Shown here one piece after another: positions 17,176 through 56,952 of a stretch of 64,000 nt of DNA (its first letter is position 1; each line of letters begins with the position of its first letter). The translations under genes and the position numbers were made by a program. The stretch covers positions 62,001-126,000 of the IMG/VR virus record IMGVR_UViG_3300024239_000011, one strand, 5' to 3'. The notes under the pieces were generated by a model. That model did not search any database. It was not told where the DNA came from and was given only the letters and a program-made list of their open reading frames with translations.

Positions 17176-17289
17176 TGGAGCGGGAGAAGGGATTCGAACC
17201 CTCGACATCAACCTTGTTAAGCCTACACCGTGACGGACACGCCTTATAGGCTTAGGCAAGGTTGCGCTCTTCCACTGAGCTACACCCGC
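17176..17289 (-). tRNA. tRNA-Gly(GCC) with 39-nt anticodon-loop insertion (17216-17254)
   Basis: removing the insert gives CAACC-TT-GCC-AA-GGTTG; U73-CCA; one acceptor mismatch. Confidence 0.85.
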
Positions 17290-18137: not shown

Positions 18138-18252
18138 TGGTGCTGACGGGGAGAATCGAACTCCCGACCTCCGCTTTGCAAAGCCTATTCCGTAAATTAC
18201 TGCGCCTAATAGGCTTGACCAAAGCGGTGCTATACCACTAAGCCACGTCAGC
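18138..18252 (-). tRNA. tRNA-Thr(GGU) with 40-nt anticodon-loop insertion (18178-18217)
   Basis: removing the insert gives CCGCT-TT-GGT-AA-AGCGG; perfect acceptor GCTGACG/CGTCAGC, A73-CCA. Confidence 0.88.
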
Positions 18253-19154: not shown

Positions 19155-19248
19155 TGGAGGAAAGGGTCGGACTCGAACCGACATACCCCTGCGTTTGCAG
19201 GCACCTGATTTGCACTCAAGGACCGTCGCCTATTCCGGTCACCTTTCC
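19155..19248 (-). tRNA. tRNA-Cys(GCA) with long class II variable arm
   Basis: GGAAAGG/CCTTTCC, U73, loop GT-GCA-AA, arm CCTGC-AAAC-GCAGG. Confidence 0.8.
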
Positions 19249-34421: not shown

Positions 34422-34505
34422 TGGCGATCCTGAGAGGATTCGAACCCCCCTTTTCAGCATCCGACTACGGTTAAGCGGGTAGAAGCCGCCCCCGGCTACA
34501 GGATC
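34422..34505 (-). tRNA. rearranged tRNA-Arg(UCU)-like gene
   Basis: perfect acceptor and T arms; anticodon arm 8 nt after acceptor; GGAT-GC-TGAAAA after it. Confidence 0.7.
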
Positions 34506-36916: not shown

Positions 36917-37008
36917 TGGCTCCCACTTGAGGTTTCGAACCTCACCCCGCATCGCTGCGAGACTTCCGGTTAACAGCCGGATACCTTCACCAAGCCGGTC
37001 CAGTGGGA
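36917..37008 (-). tRNA. tRNA-Asn(GUU) with long variable arm
   Basis: TCCGG-CT-GTT-AA-CCGGA; arm CTCGCA-GCGA-TGCGGG. Confidence 0.85.
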
Positions 37009-37574: not shown

Positions 37575-37622
37575 AGTCGAACCGGACTATGAGTATTTAG
37601 CAAACCTTGTTAATTATGGATA

Positions 37623-37712
37623 TGGAGGACACGGTGGGAATTGAACCCACGAGGGGCTTTCGCCCGTGCGATTAAAAGTCGCATGTTCTCAACCAACAAG
37701 AACGTCGTGTCC
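37623..37712 (-). tRNA. tRNA-Lys(UUU) with class II arm, U73
   Basis: TGCGA-CT-TTT-AA-TCGCA; arm GGGC-GAAA-GCCC. Confidence 0.82.
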
Positions 37713-41622: not shown

Positions 41623-41711
41623 TGGAGAACCGGGTGGGAATCGAACCCACGACGGGCTTTCGCCAGCAGTTTAAGAGACTGTTCCTACCAACCAACAGTA
41701 GGCTCCGGTTC
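41623..41711 (-). tRNA. tRNA-Lys(CUU) with class II arm, U73
   Basis: ACAGT-CT-CTT-AA-ACTGC; arm GGC-GAAA-GCC. Confidence 0.82.
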
Positions 41712-51847: not shown

Positions 51848-52273
51848 TTACCCCAACATACGCAGGATAAACGGAACGCTTGGGTCACGAACTTCAATGA
51901 TTGCGTTCCACGGCACGAATACCGAAGTTGCAACCCCACTGAAGTAAATTACCACCGTGAACCCTTCATCAGAAATTTCCAGATCATGGAACTGGTTCTG
52001 AAGCACGATGACAGTTTCCCCACGCAAATGAAGGGGGAACCCCGATACCCCGAAAATCGTGGTATCGAGGGTGATGTAGAAATGGTGTCCGTGATCATCA
52101 ACATTAGGATCATCACGGAAATTGGATAAGACCTCACGAATCATCCGAATGTTTGCAAGATGGTGTTCTCGCCGGAAGATACCGTCGTAATCAAATGCAG
52201 TGGGACTGTTCCCGGTCGCCGCTGATTTGTCTACCTGGGATTTTTTACCAGGGAAATGAATTACGTTTGTCAT
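51848..52273 (-). CDS. sspB: alphaproteobacterial-type SspB ClpXP adaptor, core domain only
   Basis: HHFYIT.DT...GV...IVLQNQF.DL....F.V...FSG.....VPW.AI....DPSV.F.L. Confidence 0.85.
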   Translation of the reverse strand: MTNVIHFPGKKSQVDKSAATGNSPTAFDYDGIFRREHHLANIRMIREVLSNFRDDPNVDDHGHHFYITLDTTIFGVSGFPLHLRGETVIVLQNQFHDLEISDEGFTVVIYFSGVATSVFVPWNAIIEVRDPSVPFILRMLG

Positions 52274-53439
52274 CAGTCAATCAACTGGATTGTTTTCGAG
52301 GATGGCTTGGGCTTGATCTTGGTAGGTTCCAAATCTTTTTCGGAGGGGTCTACCACACGGGTCACCAGGGCACGCTTGAGACGGACGACGCCACCTTCTT
52401 CAAGGATGATGTCGTTAACACATCCCGGCTTCAATTCAATTACTACAGCCTTGTCGCGATAGGTGCAATAATCAAACGCCTGTTTAATCGTCTGCTTGGC
52501 GTAGATGTATGGGTCACCAGACTGCACGTATTCACCAACTACATACTTAAATGTTGGTTTGTACATCGAGACTAGCTCATCGCCATTACGATAGACCTTC
52601 TTGAAGAACACACGATCCTTAAAGATTTCACCAACATCAACCATCTTACCATTTACTGGGCGGCAAGGAACCGGCTCATAGTCATCGCTATCCGTATAGA
52701 CCCGTGCATAGAACTTTCCGTTCAGTTGATAATACTCGATCTCACGTTTACCAACTGCGAGAATGACTTCTTCTGCGCTCCCTACAGGGGATTTAGTCGG
52801 AAAAGTCAGACGGTCGTTCATTGCAGCAAACATGTTCTCTATTGAGAACGGGGTATCTTCAGGTACCCGCACCGCCTCGCCGTAAATACCGCCAATCTGA
52901 TCAACCAGTTCATCCCATGAATTGATTGGTTTCAGCGCACAAGCCGCCAGGATTTTGAAGTTCTCAAACTTACCAATGGTGTATCCACGTTCCTTGTACT
53001 TGTTTACACGCCATGCGGACGCATACGGGAACCGTGTCTTCGGGTTAAAACGAAGAACTCGCTGACAGCAATCTTCCAAAAAATCGTCGTGGAGAACGAA
53101 TTTCTTGGTATCAACGTCATATGCCCCCATGCACACCGTAAAGTCGAAACATTCAAAAATTTTCTCAGCAGTTTCGAACGTATCAAAATGCATGATTTGG
53201 ATCGGGATATCATCGCCCTGCACAAATGTCACGGCACGTTCCGAAACATCGGCACAAAAGTACCCGCTCTCGAACATCAAATGTACTAAATCCTCAAACG
53301 CCGCTTCCGTTTTCGGATATACATCGATGTCGTTGATTGGTTTGTTCGTATATATGGAGGTAATTGAGCCACCCGCAATAAAGCAATCTTTGGCTTCCTT
53401 GGGGAGATACCCGGCTATCATCGTTGCCTTTGTCATCAC
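52273..53439 (-). CDS. nucleotidyltransferase-like protein (poly(A) polymerase/CCA head type)
   Basis: IAGGSI...INDIDVY, FDFTVCM, RVNKYKERGY. Confidence 0.7.
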   Translation of the reverse strand: MMTKATMIAGYLPKEAKDCFIAGGSITSIYTNKPINDIDVYPKTEAAFEDLVHLMFESGYFCADVSERAVTFVQGDDIPIQIMHFDTFETAEKIFECFDFTVCMGAYDVDTKKFVLHDDFLEDCCQRVLRFNPKTRFPYASAWRVNKYKERGYTIGKFENFKILAACALKPINSWDELVDQIGGIYGEAVRVPEDTPFSIENMFAAMNDRLTFPTKSPVGSAEEVILAVGKREIEYYQLNGKFYARVYTDSDDYEPVPCRPVNGKMVDVGEIFKDRVFFKKVYRNGDELVSMYKPTFKYVVGEYVQSGDPYIYAKQTIKQAFDYCTYRDKAVVIELKPGCVNDIILEEGGVVRLKRALVTRVVDPSEKDLEPTKIKPKPSSKTIQLID

Positions 53440-53975: not shown

Positions 53976-54536
53976 ATGTTGATCATGCTACTAGTGACGT
54001 GGCGCGATGATGACGCGGTGGAGCGTCAGGCAAAAACTCTATTACATCCACGTGGATGGTTTGTCGCAGAGACGTATACACCAGACGAGGATGAGGATGA
54101 TGGAACCACGCTATTCCGCATTGAACCGTTCGTCGGACAACGAACAACTGAAATCCCGGACAAGCTTTATCACGCCACCCCTGCACAAAATGTCCCGCGC
54201 ATTCTCAAGCAAGGGCTGATCCCACAACGGGGAAAGCACACCGGAATGTTCGCGGCTACACCAAACCGAATCTATATCGCCAAATCACTTGCCTACGCCG
54301 TTGATATCAAGAATATGCTTCAGAAGCACGATGGCTACAGACAAGACTACGCGATCATCGAGATCGATACGACGAAACTCCGGAAGGGGACGAAATTCTA
54401 TATCGACCCGCAATACCATTCTGGCGTCTACACGACCACGCCTGTTCCACCCGCCGCGTTGCGCGTACTCGGCAATGAGGAAGTGGAACAGTGTCCGGAA
54501 CCGGATTTCGACTACGAACTAGCGATGAATGTCTAA
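53976..54536 (+). CDS. ART-fold protein, Tpt1/KptA-like
   Basis: LYHATP..NVPRILKQGLIP, IYIA, IIEID. Confidence 0.6.
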   Translation: MLIMLLVTWRDDDAVERQAKTLLHPRGWFVAETYTPDEDEDDGTTLFRIEPFVGQRTTEIPDKLYHATPAQNVPRILKQGLIPQRGKHTGMFAATPNRIYIAKSLAYAVDIKNMLQKHDGYRQDYAIIEIDTTKLRKGTKFYIDPQYHSGVYTTTPVPPAALRVLGNEEVEQCPEPDFDYELAMNV

Positions 54537-54636
54537 CAACCGAGCGATATAGCGTTCTGCGATTTGATCATGAAAAAGCCCCTTAATGGTCCAAACCTGC
54601 ATTAGTATTTAGCAAGTTCTCCCATTAAGGGGCTAT

Positions 54637-54930
54637 TGGATCGGGGAGAGGGATTCGAACCCCCATAAAGTGGACCCTTACCACTTCGACTTTCGCCGCC
54701 CTCTTTCGAGGTTTGTGGTCTGGACTTTATCTTCACCATAGCTTGCGCCGTAGGTGCTGCCCGTCAAGTCTCTACACCTTCCGCTCTCGCGGCTTGGCTC
54801 GGGATTGGCATTTTACAGCGTTCCCCGAATTTGAGCAGTTCTACATCAAAGGTTTCCCTTTAAGCATCCGGTTTTCCTCTGTGTGGGAGGAAGGTAAAAA
54901 CCACTGGTCCTACCGTTAGACGATCCCCGA
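54637..54930 (-). tRNA. tRNA-Gln(UUG) interrupted by a group I intron
   Basis: exons 54897-54930 and 54637-54676 join to a 74-nt cloverleaf with loop TT-TTG-GT. Confidence 0.8.
54677..54896 (-). ncRNA. group I self-splicing intron, about 220 nt, no ORF
   Basis: P AAATTCGGGGAA, Q AATCCCGAG, R AGAGACTTGACGG, S AAGATAAAGTCC; P7 GACTT/AAGTC; P9.0 ACCAC/GTGGT; terminal G. Confidence 0.9.
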
Positions 54931-54980
54931 ATAGCGGTGGGAGGTATTTAGCAAAACCCCAACCCCACCGCAATAACTTT

Positions 54981-55574
54981 TTACCATCGTGTCGGTAACT
55001 GAGCTTCACCCGCAATCAAGGACGGCTCATAGATAATATCCTTCGGGTCATGATCTTTGTACCCAAACCCACGATACTTTTTCAACCGATCAGCCTTGAC
55101 ATCACCACCCGGCTTGGATGGACGCAACGTCATAGTCTTATTGTCCCAGAAGAAGTTATCGGTACATATCACTACGCGATTAAACACGTCAAGCGCACCT
55201 TGACACACCGTCATATCAAACGACTCAAAAATACTCATGGGCGAATCGAAAGTACGTTCGACCAACTGTATACTAACATAGTGATCTTCTCCGATCAGAA
55301 TGCTTTCATAGCTAGTGGCGTTGGTACTATTGTAGGCAACTTCCTCACCACCCGCATATTCAGACAAATAATCATTGAATTTTGCATGATCGTTGCTCGA
55401 CCGTGTGTAGCAGTCCACATCACCATCTAGAAGATTACGACCAGTTAGAAGCCGAGAAACAAATCCCCCGGCAATCATAACCTCGACCCCACTATCACTG
55501 ATGAACTTGAAAAGTTCTTTAAATGGATAATCATGGGGGTATTTCTGGGTTAGACTGAACAACGGTATGATCAT
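54981..55574 (-). CDS. second nucleotidyltransferase-like protein
   Basis: IAGGFV...DGDVDCY, FDMTVCQ, RLKKYRGFGY. Confidence 0.7.
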   Translation of the reverse strand: MIIPLFSLTQKYPHDYPFKELFKFISDSGVEVMIAGGFVSRLLTGRNLLDGDVDCYTRSSNDHAKFNDYLSEYAGGEEVAYNSTNATSYESILIGEDHYVSIQLVERTFDSPMSIFESFDMTVCQGALDVFNRVVICTDNFFWDNKTMTLRPSKPGGDVKADRLKKYRGFGYKDHDPKDIIYEPSLIAGEAQLPTRW

Positions 55575-56030: not shown

Positions 56031-56345
56031 TTACCGAATCTTCAGGTAAAGATTCTCACCGTCTCGGTGCTGATCCAACTGCTGCTTGGTGGGTTCGTAG
56101 AAATCCATCAGCGCAGGAACAGTCAGTCCGAGGTCGTAGGCGTACCGAAGAAGCTGTCGAATCTGCTCCTGGCTGAACATGCCTTCATTGGCAAAATGAT
56201 CGGTCATCAATTCAACATGAAATGCAGCTTCTTCATTGCCGCGTAGCTTTGCCATGTCGAACACGTTGCGTATGAGATCAAGCAACGGCTCAATCATTTC
56301 ATCACGAATTTTCATTAGCTTACCTTCTGTGGAATCGTAGTTCAT
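56031..56345 (-). CDS. hypothetical protein
   Basis: 104 aa ORF. Confidence 0.65.
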   Translation of the reverse strand: MNYDSTEGKLMKIRDEMIEPLLDLIRNVFDMAKLRGNEEAAFHVELMTDHFANEGMFSQEQIRQLLRYAYDLGLTVPALMDFYEPTKQQLDQHRDGENLYLKIR

Positions 56346-56952
56346 CTACCTCGATATCAATGTCGTACTTTGCCCACAGCAAGGTCAAGAAATCAGTGGC
56401 TTCTTGCTCACTAAATTCCGACGAAAAAGCAGTCATGTTCAATGCGCGGAATTGCACGCAGCGTCGCAGGTCTTCTTTGATTTGAATGATGTGGGGATGG
56501 TTCTTATATACTTCGCCAATCCGTTGGCGGATGGCATTCAACTTGATGAATTTTGTTCGTTCTGGTGGTAGAACAACCTTATCGGCTTTCTTCCCATTAC
56601 AGTTGGCACACATGGGTTGCCCATTCGCCAATGTGTCGTTCCCGCCTTTTGATTTCGGAACGATGTGATCCAACGTCATCAGATCACGACCACCGTTCCG
56701 CATCCCATACAGGTTCATAATCGAAAGAGTACAGTCCTTGGGCGTATCCAACCATATTTCAACGAAATGATGTCCTTCCAGCCCGCAAGAAACGCATTTG
56801 GTGCCTTTCTCAACAAACAACTGAAGGGTACGAGATATCCGCAGACGATTACCACTGGGTAGCCAAATGCTGCGTTTGCCATCGGCACGTGCCTGGGTCA
56901 GCAACGGCATAATCTCAGCAATAGGATAACTCGCTAAGGGCTGTTCGGACAT
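56320..56952 (-). CDS. HNH endonuclease
   Basis: MTLDHIVPKSKGG.D.L.N...MC..CN..KAD. Confidence 0.88.
   Translation of the reverse strand: MSEQPLASYPIAEIMPLLTQARADGKRSIWLPSGNRLRISRTLQLFVEKGTKCVSCGLEGHHFVEIWLDTPKDCTLSIMNLYGMRNGGRDLMTLDHIVPKSKGGNDTLANGQPMCANCNGKKADKVVLPPERTKFIKLNAIRQRIGEVYKNHPHIIQIKEDLRRCVQFRALNMTAFSSEFSEQEATDFLTLLWAKYDIDIEVDELRFHRR

What the first reader, a model, noticed from the sequence alone, without database searches (positions are those of the whole stretch)
54637..54930. Group I intron in a phage tRNA-Gln body, with a splice-site ambiguity
Seen: complete P, Q, R, S elements, P7 and P9.0 in about 220 nt. Known bacterial tRNA group I introns that I recall are in Leu(UAA), fMet, Ile(CAU) and Arg(CCU), so Gln would be a different site. 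The body and a TT-TTG-GT loop point to Gln, but the guide GAAAACC pairs best with the U-G wobble at the fifth T. That would give an 8-nt loop or, using the next G as terminal, a UUU anticodon on a Gln body.
Basis: partly seen in the sequence, partly recalled or inferred. Interest (0 to 1): 0.7.

Follow-up and report, generated by a model that had tools for sequence, protein, structure and literature searches.

The report
Self-splicing intron in phage tRNA-Gln
A 543-kb phage carries a glutamine tRNA gene split in its anticodon by a 220-base self-splicing (group I) intron; comparison with relatives shows it should splice to a normal tRNA-Gln(UUG), so the suspected splice-site problem is most likely only apparent, and the tRNA host is new to the literature I could search.

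Summary
Confirmed: on the minus strand, window 54930-54637 is a tRNA gene interrupted by a 220-nt group I intron (Rfam RF00028, 52.1 bits, cut-off 50). The record is a 543-kb phage genome.

The tRNA is Gln(UUG). Intron-less phage tRNA-Gln genes with the same body have the loop UUUUGGU. Five other intron-bearing tRNA-Gln genes from metagenomes have the intron at the same place, between anticodon bases 35 and 36, and there the 5' splice site is unambiguous.

The homologous guide is 5'-ACC-G-GA-3' (54872-54867), three bases before P2. GGA pairs with U33-U35, with the G.U wobble at U35. ACC pairs with G36-G37-U38 of the 3' exon (P10). Both helices pair in all six Gln introns. The expected product is canonical Gln(UUG), not UUU or an 8-nt loop.

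A one-base slip on the five-U run remains possible, and no RNA data exist for this locus.

The intron belongs to a family found in many phage tRNA genes (Leu, Lys, Arg, Asn, Thr, CAU-anticodon, Gln). A 2014 review states that all phage group I introns then known were in protein genes. I rate it a new member of a known kind, of moderate interest.

The parts
54897..54930 (-). Exon 1 of tRNA-Gln(UUG), tRNA positions 1-35. It comprises acceptor UCGGGGA, D arm GUCU-AACGGUA-GGAC, anticodon stem AGUGG and loop bases U32-U35 (54900-54897).
   Evidence: Cloverleaf from ARAGORN. The same body occurs in the intron-less tRNA-Gln genes L005, L006 and L007. All stems pair in 6 of 6 Gln homologues, with compensatory changes.
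54677..54896 (-). Group I intron of 220 nt, IC3-like, with no ORF. The first base is the fifth U of the run (54896). The last base is the terminal guanosine omegaG (54677).
   Evidence: Rfam RF00028 at 52.1 bits. Boundaries come from homology with five other Gln introns and the family rule GUGG-UANG|exon2.
54637..54676 (-). Exon 2, tRNA positions 36-76: G36 G37 U38, anticodon stem CCACU, 4-nt variable loop UUAU, T arm GGGGG-UUCGAAU-CCCUC, acceptor UCCCCGA, discriminator U and CCA.
54867..54872 (-). Internal guide 5'-ACC-G-GA-3'. ACC (54872-54870) is the P10 guide for G36-G37-U38. G54869 makes the wobble pair with U35 at the 5' splice site. G54868 and A54867 pair with U34 and U33 (P1).
   Evidence: P1 and P10 pair in 6 of 6 Gln introns, with C/U changes opposite G36 and G37 and a G/A change opposite U34. 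The position three bases before P2 is the same as in 18 other family members.
54870..54876 (-). It can pair with G30-U35 plus the fifth U (7 bp) and overlaps the P10 guide.
   Evidence: The G at 54876 is not conserved: the relatives have U or A there and lack a fifth U.
54874..54892 (-). Hairpin in the P1 loop (L1): UUCCUC-CCACACA-GAGGAA. This region varies in length among relatives (3-21 nt).
   Evidence: RNAfold minimum-free-energy structure. Alignment gaps.
54846..54863 (-). P2, UUAAAGG-GAAA-CCUUUGA, a GAAA-capped hairpin.
   Evidence: Covariation in 24 introns and in the six Gln introns.
54757..54838 (-). P3 (54838-54833 with 54762-54757), which encloses P4 (54828-54823 with 54804-54799), P5 and P6/P6a.
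   Evidence: Rfam alignment. P3 shows 11-13 compensatory changes per pair in 24 introns. Pair table.
54723..54770 (-). P7 (GACU 54770-54767 with AGUC 54726-54723), which encloses P8 (54756-54734) and J8/7 AAGAUAA.
   Evidence: P7 is nearly invariant, so it gives no covariation evidence.
54680..54719 (-). P9 three-way junction: ACCAC (54719-54715) with GUGGU (54684-54680), P9a CCUC-GAAA-GAGG (54711-54700) and P9b CGGC-GAAA-GUCG (54698-54687). It is followed by A, A and omegaG.
   Evidence: The region is nearly identical to the P9 region of the CAU-tRNA intron L052.
54945..54954 (-). TTGCTAAATA motif 15 nt upstream of the tRNA, a promoter-like element (inferred).
   Evidence: 11 copies in the genome against about 1 expected. 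One copy also lies 12 nt upstream of the intron-bearing tRNA-Asn.
54573..54634 (-). 13-bp inverted repeat (AGCCCCUUAAUGG ... CCAUUAAGGGGCU) followed by UUUU, a terminator-like element after the tRNA.
   Evidence: Read from the sequence. The simple terminator scan does not report it because the loop is long.

Best explanation
Window 54930-54637 (minus strand) is a phage gene for tRNA-Gln(UUG), interrupted between anticodon positions 35 and 36 by a 220-nt IC3-type group I intron (54896-54677).

How it most likely works. The precursor keeps its anticodon stem. The intron's 6-nt guide 5'-ACCGGA-3' (54872-54867), three bases before P2, is complementary to the future anticodon loop U33-U38. In step 1, GGA pairs with U33-U35 (P1), and an external guanosine attacks after U35, which sits in the G54869.U35 wobble pair. 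In step 2, ACC pairs with G36-G37-U38 (P10), the terminal G54677 occupies the G site in P7, and the exons are ligated. The product is a 74-nt tRNA with the loop UUUUGGU, that is anticodon UUG with G37 and U38.

The intron carries no ORF. It is best seen as a selfish but harmless passenger that belongs to a family moving among phage tRNA genes.

Shown: the intron fold match, the cloverleaf, the homology, and the guide-exon pairing across relatives. Inferred: the catalysis, the exact junction in this copy, and aminoacylation with Gln.
For: (1) Rfam RF00028 matches at 52.1 bits, above the cut-off of 50, with E 2.4e-10.

(2) Every proposed tRNA and intron helix is canonical in this sequence.

(3) Intron-less phage tRNA-Gln(UUG) genes with the same body (D arm UCGUCUAAYGGUAGGAC, 4-nt variable loop, U1-A72) all read UUUUGGU in the loop (L005, L006, L007). 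They are 55-59 of 74 bases identical to the spliced form.

(4) With the loop masked, the best matches in this genome are its own tRNA-Gln genes, scoring 27.5 and 27.0 against 19.5 or less for other tRNAs.

(5) Five other intron-bearing tRNA-Gln genes (L102-L106) read ..GGGAUUUU|A/G.. and ..GUGGUANG|GGUUCCCA. Only the 35|36 junction gives a 7-nt loop there.

(6) P1 (3 pairs) and P10 (3 pairs) are paired in 6 of 6 Gln introns. The changes keep pairing: C-G to U.G opposite G36 and G37, and G.U to A-U opposite U34. The acceptor, D, anticodon and T stems, joined across the intron, pair 6 of 6 with compensatory changes.

(7) Across 18 other family members in Leu, Lys, Arg, Asn and CAU tRNAs, the guide G lies just before P2, and omegaG is the 4th base after the P9 3' strand in 15 of the 18. 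This intron's guide fits its own exons (5 pairs) better than any of 18 non-cognate exon contexts (maximum 4).

(8) The family fold is under selection: 26 of 35 RNAalifold pairs show compensatory changes in 24 introns.

(9) In two rumen metatranscriptome runs from one sample, the exact L103 Gln intron stands at word depth 155-388 and 88. The exon positions stand at about 0 and the flanks at 45, 10, 9 and 5. This fits an excised intron that accumulates.
Against: There is no RNA evidence for this locus. The only runs that hold it are DNA or DNA-like and show the unspliced form.

P1 is weak: three pairs, two of them wobbles, next to a U32.U mismatch.

Because the first intron base is also U, the same GGA can pair one base further on with equal strength. 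That would place the cut after the fifth U.

The 7-bp helix GAAAACC/GGUUUUU ends in a G.U at the fifth U and is thermodynamically stronger than the homologous P1.

The Rfam score is only just above the cut-off. Of the relatives, only L104 scores at all (40.6 bits).

The RNA depth data are assembler contigs from relatives. They contain no read across a ligated junction.

G37 and the U73 discriminator differ from E. coli tRNA-Gln (my own knowledge), so Gln charging is inferred from the anticodon and from relatives only.
Confidence: 0.78

Rival explanations
1. One reading: the 5' splice site is after the fifth U (54896). It is set either by the 7-bp helix GAAAACC/GGUUUUU or by a one-base slip of GGA along the U run. 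With omegaG at 54677 this gives a tRNA with an 8-nt anticodon loop, UUUUUGGU. With omegaG at 54676 it gives a UUU anticodon on a Gln body, which is ARAGORN's call of Lys(ttt). This could be the main product or a minor one.
For: The 7-bp complementarity with a terminal G.U is real. ARAGORN with introns allowed chooses this junction. The slipped register has the same three pairs as the homologous one (read from the sequence). Another tRNA in the window is called with a 4-base anticodon, so expanded loops may not be foreign to this phage.
Against: G54876 and the fifth U are absent from all five homologous Gln introns, which still keep AAAAC. The helix would consume the conserved P10 guide and melt two G-C pairs of the anticodon stem. 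Its 3' end lies 5-6 bases from P2, against 0-3 in the family. It has no P10 (0 pairs). A similar 6-pair match to the same exon exists inside P2, so such matches arise easily here. No intron-less relative has a UUUUUGU or an 8-nt loop. With the loop masked, the Lys tRNAs of this phage are not among the 12 best matches to the body. omegaG is the 4th base after the P9 3' strand in most of the family.
Confidence: 0.12
2. The intron no longer splices, or splices too poorly, in this copy. The gene is then a dead fifth Gln tRNA gene in a genome that has four intact ones.
For: P1 is very weak. The Rfam score is marginal. The genome has two UUG and two CUG tRNA-Gln genes without group I introns, so loss would be tolerated.
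Against: All core helices and both exons are intact. The core is 93% identical to the co-resident tRNA-Lys intron, with a 73-nt perfect run. The guide still matches its own exons specifically. A promoter-like motif and a terminator-like hairpin flank the gene.
Confidence: 0.08
3. It is not an intron at all but a chance resemblance or an unrelated insertion.
For: None beyond the marginal Rfam score.
Against: E is 2e-10 to 2e-12 over the full-length model. The sequence is homologous to dozens of introns with covarying helices. The exons join to a perfect cloverleaf.
Confidence: 0.01

Closest known systems
[quoted passage not shown]
   Same: A small ORF-less intron of about 200 nt in a tRNA anticodon loop. 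It has a short P1 built from loop bases, GAAA-capped P2 and P9, no P5abc, and the same R and S sequences (GUGUAGAGACU, AAGAUAUAGUCC). These comparisons rest on the Rfam alignment and on my own knowledge of the Azoarcus sequence.
   Different: The host is a phage, not a betaproteobacterium. The tRNA is Gln(UUG). The insertion is 35|36, inside the anticodon, rather than 3' of the anticodon (36|37; my own knowledge). P9 is a three-way junction with two GAAA hairpins.
[quoted passage not shown]
   Same: It belongs to the same sequence family. Phage Leu(UAA) introns found with the core pattern share P3-P9 and the GUGGUAAG 3' end. The anticodon stem is kept during splicing (Zaug et al. 1993, cited in PMC3984707).
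   Different: The insertion is 34|35 with guide GAGU, against 35|36 with guide ACC-G-GA here. The tRNA is class II.
Co-resident tRNA-Lys(UUU) intron of the same phage (genome 503997-504190; locus L004)
   Same: The site is the same, 35|36. The core is 144 of 155 bases identical, including a 73-nt perfect run. The 3' end is the same, GUGGUA(U/A)G.
   Different: The guide is UG-G-GAG, for the loop CUUU|UAA. Its P1 loop is 4 nt against 21 nt here. The P2 sequence is different. In the guide-P2 module, the Gln intron is closer to other Gln introns (31 of 37 bases to L104) than to this paralogue.
Group I introns of phage protein genes (T4 td, nrdB and sunY; Twort; Bastillevirinae)
   Same: [quoted passage not shown]
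   Different: Those interrupt protein-coding genes and often carry homing endonuclease ORFs. The 2014 review states that all phage introns then known were in protein genes, although many phages carry tRNA genes (PMC3984707).

Membership tests
Group I intron (Rfam RF00028) | Conserved core fold P3-P9 with the P/Q/R/S sequences, scored by the family covariance model | tested here: met
   52.1 bits against a gathering score of 50, over the full model 1-253, with E 2.4e-10. The helices are canonical and covary in 24 relatives.
Group I intron (Rfam RF00028) | The 5' splice site follows a U in a G.U wobble pair of P1, formed with an internal guide | tested here: met
   The G54869.U35 (54897) wobble is conserved in 6 of 6 Gln introns. 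The guide lies three bases before P2, as in 18 family members. An alternative register exists.
Group I intron (Rfam RF00028) | A terminal guanosine (omegaG) at the 3' splice site, and P10 pairing with the 3' exon | tested here: met
   G54677 is the 4th base after the P9 3' strand, as in most of the family. P10 ACC/GGU pairs in 6 of 6.
Group I intron (Rfam RF00028) | Guanosine-dependent self-splicing | not testable with these tools
   No RNA runs hold this locus. Indirect only: the homologous L103 intron accumulates in rumen metatranscriptomes.
IC3-type tRNA introns | Small size (about 200-250 nt), no P5abc, GNRA-capped P2 and P9, insertion in a tRNA anticodon loop | tested here: met
   The intron is 220 nt. 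P2 and P9a/P9b are capped by GAAA. No extended P5 is present. The subgroup-specific IC3 model was not available, so the subgroup label rests on architecture.
IC3-type tRNA introns | Insertion at one of the described sites: Leu(UAA), fMet, Ile2(CAU) or Arg(CCU) | tested here: not met
   The host is tRNA-Gln(UUG) and the site is 35|36. The papers read name only Leu, fMet, Ile2 and Arg.
tRNA-Gln(UUG) | Cloverleaf with a 7-nt anticodon loop carrying UUG at positions 34-36 after splicing | tested here: met
   ARAGORN calls the joined exons tRNA-Gln(ttg), 74 nt, junction 35|36. This depends on the inferred junction.
tRNA-Gln(UUG) | The body resembles known or predicted tRNA-Gln genes (U1-A72, D arm) | tested here: met
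   U1-A72 is present. The body is closest to this phage's own Gln genes and to the intron-less phage Gln genes L005-L007.
tRNA-Gln(UUG) | Charged with glutamine, by GlnRS or by GluRS plus GatCAB | not testable with these tools
U73 and G37 differ from E. coli tRNA-Gln (my own knowledge).

The most novel reading that the evidence does not exclude
The five-U run, together with the copy-specific second guide GAAAACC, makes this intron use two 5' splice sites. Besides normal tRNA-Gln(UUG), the phage would then make a fraction of tRNA with an 8-nt loop, UUUUUGGU, which could read a four-base codon or promote +1 frameshifting. Splice-site choice would act as a switch. The window holds another tRNA that ARAGORN reads with a 4-base anticodon (34422-34505).
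Probability: 0.07. Interest if true: 0.85.

Novelty: new member of a known kind. Interest (0 to 1): 0.5.

Why it matters
The intron's mechanism is the classic one, so the single locus is not surprising to a ribozyme specialist. Three things make it worth a note.

First, the host gene, tRNA-Gln, and the insertion point inside the anticodon (35|36) are not among the tRNA intron sites named in the papers I could search. A 2014 review says that no group I intron was then known in a phage tRNA gene.

Second, the locus is one of many. The same intron family sits in phage tRNA genes for Leu, Lys (two sites), Arg, Asn, Thr, CAU-anticodon tRNAs and Gln. In each case a 5-7-nt guide is rewritten to match the anticodon loop it occupies. 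The modules are mosaic, with a 73-nt perfect run shared by two introns of this one genome. This is a natural system for asking how group I introns change target, by reverse splicing or by recombination.

Third, it has a practical side. Standard tRNA finders miss or misname these genes. ARAGORN calls this one Lys, the Lys gene Leu and the Asn gene Tyr. tRNA repertoires and codon-usage inferences for large phages are therefore biased.

Tried and rejected
(1) RNA evidence for this locus. The only runs that hold it are subsurface and soil DNA runs, plus a wastewater 'RNA' run that is probably DNA, with unspliced 151-nt contigs. No joint was seen.

(2) Close relatives of the phage through the flanking 197-aa protein: none found in IMG/VR. 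megablast of 20 kb of the window against GenBank phages: no match.

(3) Orthologous Gln introns in IMG/VR by an exon+intron pattern: none. A 3' exon pattern: none.

(4) The Gln-intron pattern in 185,579 GTDB species genomes: one hit, in an archaeal MAG, which on inspection is a chance match with no tRNA or intron.

(5) Rfam on the five metagenomic Gln introns. Only L104 is detected (40.6 bits, below the cut-off), because of the large insertions. Homology was shown by alignment instead.

(6) Brute-force joining of all U/G splice-site pairs with ARAGORN is too permissive to decide the junction. It accepts many isotypes per locus.

(7) The RNAfold minimum-free-energy structure does not decide between the P1 alternatives.

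(8) The ARAGORN labels Lys(ttt) for this gene, Leu(taa) for L004 and Tyr(gta) for L001 were rejected after manual parsing.

(9) Literature. No paper was found on group I introns in phage tRNA genes or in tRNA-Gln. [quoted passage not shown] The older primary papers (PMC179611, PMC395396) are not held.

(10) I did not send the 738-column structure string to the count of structure pairs because of its length. The pair counts were computed in a script instead.

Full report

Yes. On the minus strand, Rfam's group I intron model (RF00028) matches window 54900-54697 over its whole length at 52.1 bits. The gathering score is 50. E is 2.4e-10 for the 64-kb search and 2.1e-12 locally.

The flanks are two halves of a tRNA: 54930-54897 and 54676-54637, with an encoded CCA. 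The finding's coordinates are exactly those of the gene.

ARAGORN in its default mode misses the gene. With introns allowed it reports a 74-nt tRNA with a 220-nt intron at these coordinates.

The window is G000:C1:62001-126000 of a 543,035-bp IMG/VR virus record, public contig Ga0247724_1000001. The record comes from subsurface metagenomes. Its genome encodes a major head protein (phrog_138, E 1.3e-98). It carries about 70 tRNA genes, so 'phage' is justified.

**2. Which tRNA is it?**

The body has U1-A72, the D arm GUCU-AACGGUA-GGAC, a 4-nt variable loop and the discriminator U73.

A pattern taken from the 5' exon found three intron-less phage tRNA genes in IMG/VR (L005, L006, L007). They have the same architecture, and in all three the anticodon loop reads UUUUGGU. 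ARAGORN calls them tRNA-Gln(ttg). They are 55-59 of 74 bases identical to the exons joined as UUUU|GGU.

With the loop masked, the best matches among this genome's own tRNAs are its Gln(CUG) and Gln(UUG) genes, scoring 27.5 and 27.0. The next non-Gln tRNA scores 19.5. The Lys genes are not in the top twelve.

**3. Where are the splice sites?**

The DNA reads GUGG-UUUUU-ACC...GUGGUAAG-GG-UCCAC. A 7-nt loop UUUUGGU needs the cut after the fourth U (54897) and omegaG at 54677.

*(a) The intron family.* A pattern from the P4'-P6-P7 core hits 89 stretches of IMG/VR. I parsed 18 of them plus this genome's own copies by hand. They sit in these tRNA genes:
- Leu(UAA), 34|35
- Lys(UUU), 34|35 and 35|36
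- Arg(UCU), 34|35
- Lys(CUU), 35|36
- Asn(GUU), 35|36
- CAU-anticodon tRNAs, 33|34

In nearly all of them the intron ends GUGG-UANG, so omegaG is the fourth base after the P9 3' strand. The guide G that pairs with the splice-site U lies 0-3 bases before the GAAA-capped P2. P1 has only 2-6 further pairs. The bases 5' of the guide G pair with the 3' exon (P10).

The P9 region of this intron is nearly identical to that of L052, whose junction is GUGGUAAG|CAUAA. Applied here, the rule gives GUGGUAAG|GGUCCAC, with omegaG at 54677.

*(b) Other Gln introns.* A metagenome scan for 'P9b - GUGGUANG - G - 16/17 nt - T loop' returned this contig, a Thr(UGU) intron, and five further intron-bearing tRNA-Gln genes, L102-L106. 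One of them lies on a 363-kb contig.

Their exons read UGGGA-UUUU|A or G ... GUGGUA(A/U)G|GGU-UCCCA. There is no fifth U, so the 5' site is unambiguous. The loop is again UUUUGGU.

Their introns are 431-600 nt because of insertions in peripheral loops. The core and the 5' module still align with ours. The stretch from AAAAC through P2 to GUAGAA is 31 of 37 bases identical between ours and L104.

*(c) The guide.* In all six Gln introns the guide reads 5'-(A)AC(C/U)-G-(G/A)A-3':
- The G pairs with U35 as the wobble.
- The next two bases pair with U34 and U33.
- U32 faces a U.
- The three bases 5' of the G pair with G36, G37 and U38.

P1 and P10 are paired in 6 of 6. The variation keeps pairing: C-G or U.G opposite G36 and G37, and G.U or A-U opposite U34.

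The guide ACCGGA (54872-54867) is thus the complement of the ligated loop UUUGGU. This is the arrangement expected of a group I internal guide, which aligns both exons. In a cross test, this intron's 5' region fits its own exon context (5 pairs) better than any of 18 other contexts (maximum 4).

**4.

The 7-bp match to GGUUUUU, with a G.U at the fifth U, is real and stronger than the homologous P1. However:
- Its last three bases are the P10 guide.
- Its G and the fifth U are absent from the relatives.
- It would open two G-C pairs of the anticodon stem.
- It has no P10.
- It lies further from P2 than any guide in the family.
- GGGAAACC within P2 gives a comparable 6-pair match to the same exon.

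I read it as a by-product. The exon 1 end (GG + U run) resembles the start of exon 2 (GGU), so the P10 guide and its flanking A's can also pair with exon 1.

What I cannot exclude is a one-base slip of GGA on the U run. That would give the same three pairs, a cut after the fifth U, and an 8-nt loop. Only an experiment can settle its frequency.

**5. Is the fold under selection, and is it active?**

All helices proposed for this copy are canonical. In an alignment of 24 family introns, RNAalifold recovers P2, P3, P4, P5, P6, P9 and P9b. Of its 35 pairs, 26 have compensatory changes.

Across the six Gln genes, the acceptor, D, anticodon and T stems pair in every sequence with compensatory changes, although the intron separates their strands.

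There is no RNA for this phage. For the relative L103, two bovine rumen metatranscriptome runs from one sample hold intron-internal contigs with no mismatch. Their word depths are 155-388 and 88. The exon positions have about 0, the flanks have 45, 10, 9 and 5, and a single depth-2.4 contig crosses the intron-exon 2 border. This fits excision and accumulation of the intron. It does not show the ligated junction.

**6. Setting in the genome.**

The genome has four RF00028 matches. Three are in tRNA genes, and all three lie at 35|36:
- this Gln gene;
- a Lys(UUU) gene (genome 503997-504190), which ARAGORN calls Leu(taa);
- an Asn(GUU) gene (about genome 508489-508722), which ARAGORN calls Tyr(gta).

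The fourth lies beside a GIY-YIG/NUMOD3 endonuclease gene and a tail-tube-like ORF.

The Gln and Lys introns share 144 of 155 core positions and a 73-nt perfect run, while their guide and P2 modules differ. This points to recent recombination between co-resident introns.

A motif TTGCTAAATA occurs 11 times in the genome against about 1 expected. It lies 15 nt upstream of this tRNA and 12 nt upstream of the Asn gene. A 13-bp inverted repeat with a U run follows the tRNA.

**7. Comparison with what is known.**

The closest known systems are the IC3 tRNA introns of Azoarcus (tRNA-Ile CAU) and of cyanobacteria and plastids (tRNA-Leu UAA). The mechanism and architecture are the same here. The host gene, the insertion point and the phage carrier differ.

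The papers I could read name Leu(UAA), fMet, Ile2(CAU) and Arg as bacterial tRNA hosts (PMC4033280; PMC8450103). A 2014 review states that all phage group I introns then known were in protein-coding genes, although many phages carry tRNA genes (PMC3984707). Five full-text searches found no report of a group I intron in tRNA-Gln or in a phage tRNA gene. The library does not hold most subscription journals, so this is not proof of absence.

Public records do hold unannotated examples. Gordonia phage Daredevil has a tRNA-Lys(UUU) gene with such an intron. The huge-phage records LR756501 and LR756511 have Leu(UAA) introns.

**8. Verdict.**

It is probably wrong about the guide, and with it most of the ambiguity.

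The expected product is an ordinary tRNA-Gln(UUG) (confidence about 0.78). I give about 0.12 to a cut after the fifth U as a main or substantial product, and about 0.08 to a dead gene.

It is a new member of a known kind. Its interest lies mostly in the wider pattern it exposes: a family of small group I introns spread over many phage tRNA genes, with guides matched to each anticodon loop.

Noticed in passing
window 17176-17289 (-) and window 18138-18252 (-): Two tRNA genes carry a 37-40-nt insertion in the anticodon loop with a shared palindromic motif, AAGCCTAT(A/T)AGGCG...TAGGCTT, that extends the anticodon stem into a long hairpin. It is too short to be group I. These are the only two copies in the 543-kb genome, and the exact pattern finds none in IMG/VR. 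It could be a mini-intron or a small mobile palindrome.
   Followed up: partly
window 53976-54536 (+): The ORF next to the tRNA-Gln gene weakly matches the RNA 2'-phosphotransferase family Tpt1/KptA (Pfam PF01885, 22.3 bits, below the cut-off of 26; phrog_5470, E 5e-4). This is an enzyme of tRNA splicing and RNA repair. The neighbouring ORFs 54981-55574 (-) and 52273-53439 (-) are nucleotidyltransferase-like, and 56320-56952 (-) is an HNH endonuclease.
   Followed up: partly
window 34422-34505 (-): ARAGORN reads this tRNA with a four-base anticodon (ctta) and an 8-nt loop. With introns allowed it calls it Leu(taa) with a 3-nt 'intron'.
   Followed up: no
window 37623-37712, 41623-41711, 19155-19248, 36917-37008 (all -), and genome 156823-156908, 159378-159462: Many tRNAs of isotypes that normally have a short variable loop (Lys, Gln, Cys, Asn, Thr, Gly) are 83-94 nt long. 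In the Lys and Gln genes I inspected, the extra length is a GNRA-capped hairpin (for example GGGCGAAAGCCC) in the variable region.
   Followed up: no
genome 503997-504190 (+) (L004) and about 508489-508722 (+) (L001), outside the window: Two more group I introns sit in tRNA genes of the same phage, both at 35|36: Lys(UUU) and Asn(GUU). ARAGORN mislabels them Leu(taa) and Tyr(gta). The Lys intron shares a 73-nt perfect run with the Gln intron, which suggests gene conversion.
   Followed up: yes
genome 53955-54194 (+) (L002 1450-1740), outside the window: A fourth group I intron (82 bits) is not in a tRNA. It lies between a GIY-YIG/NUMOD3 homing-endonuclease-like ORF and a T4 gp19-like tail tube ORF.
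   Followed up: partly
L008-L096 (IMG/VR), L097 (Gordonia phage Daredevil NC_048021, about 41.5-42.1 kb), L098 (LR756501), L100 (LR756511), L107: The same intron family is widespread in phage tRNA genes: Leu UAA, Lys UUU and CUU, Arg UCU, Asn GUU, Thr UGU and CAU-anticodon tRNAs. It also occurs in a conserved phage protein gene. The Daredevil tRNA-Lys(UUU) gene with its intron is not annotated in the GenBank record. The LR756511 copy adjoins an ORF with an HNH-like motif.
   Followed up: partly
window 54945-54954, 54606-54615, 37594-37603 (all -), and 8 further genome sites: The motif TTGCTAAATA, usually preceded by T's, occurs 11 times against about 1 expected. It often lies just upstream of tRNA or protein genes and is a candidate phage promoter element.
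   Followed up: partly
L103 2198-2753 (rumen contig Ga0256407_10000022): In bovine rumen metatranscriptomes, the 556-nt intron of a homologous tRNA-Gln gene is far more abundant than its flanks. Many related intron variants with different peripheral insertions coexist in the same runs.
   Followed up: partly
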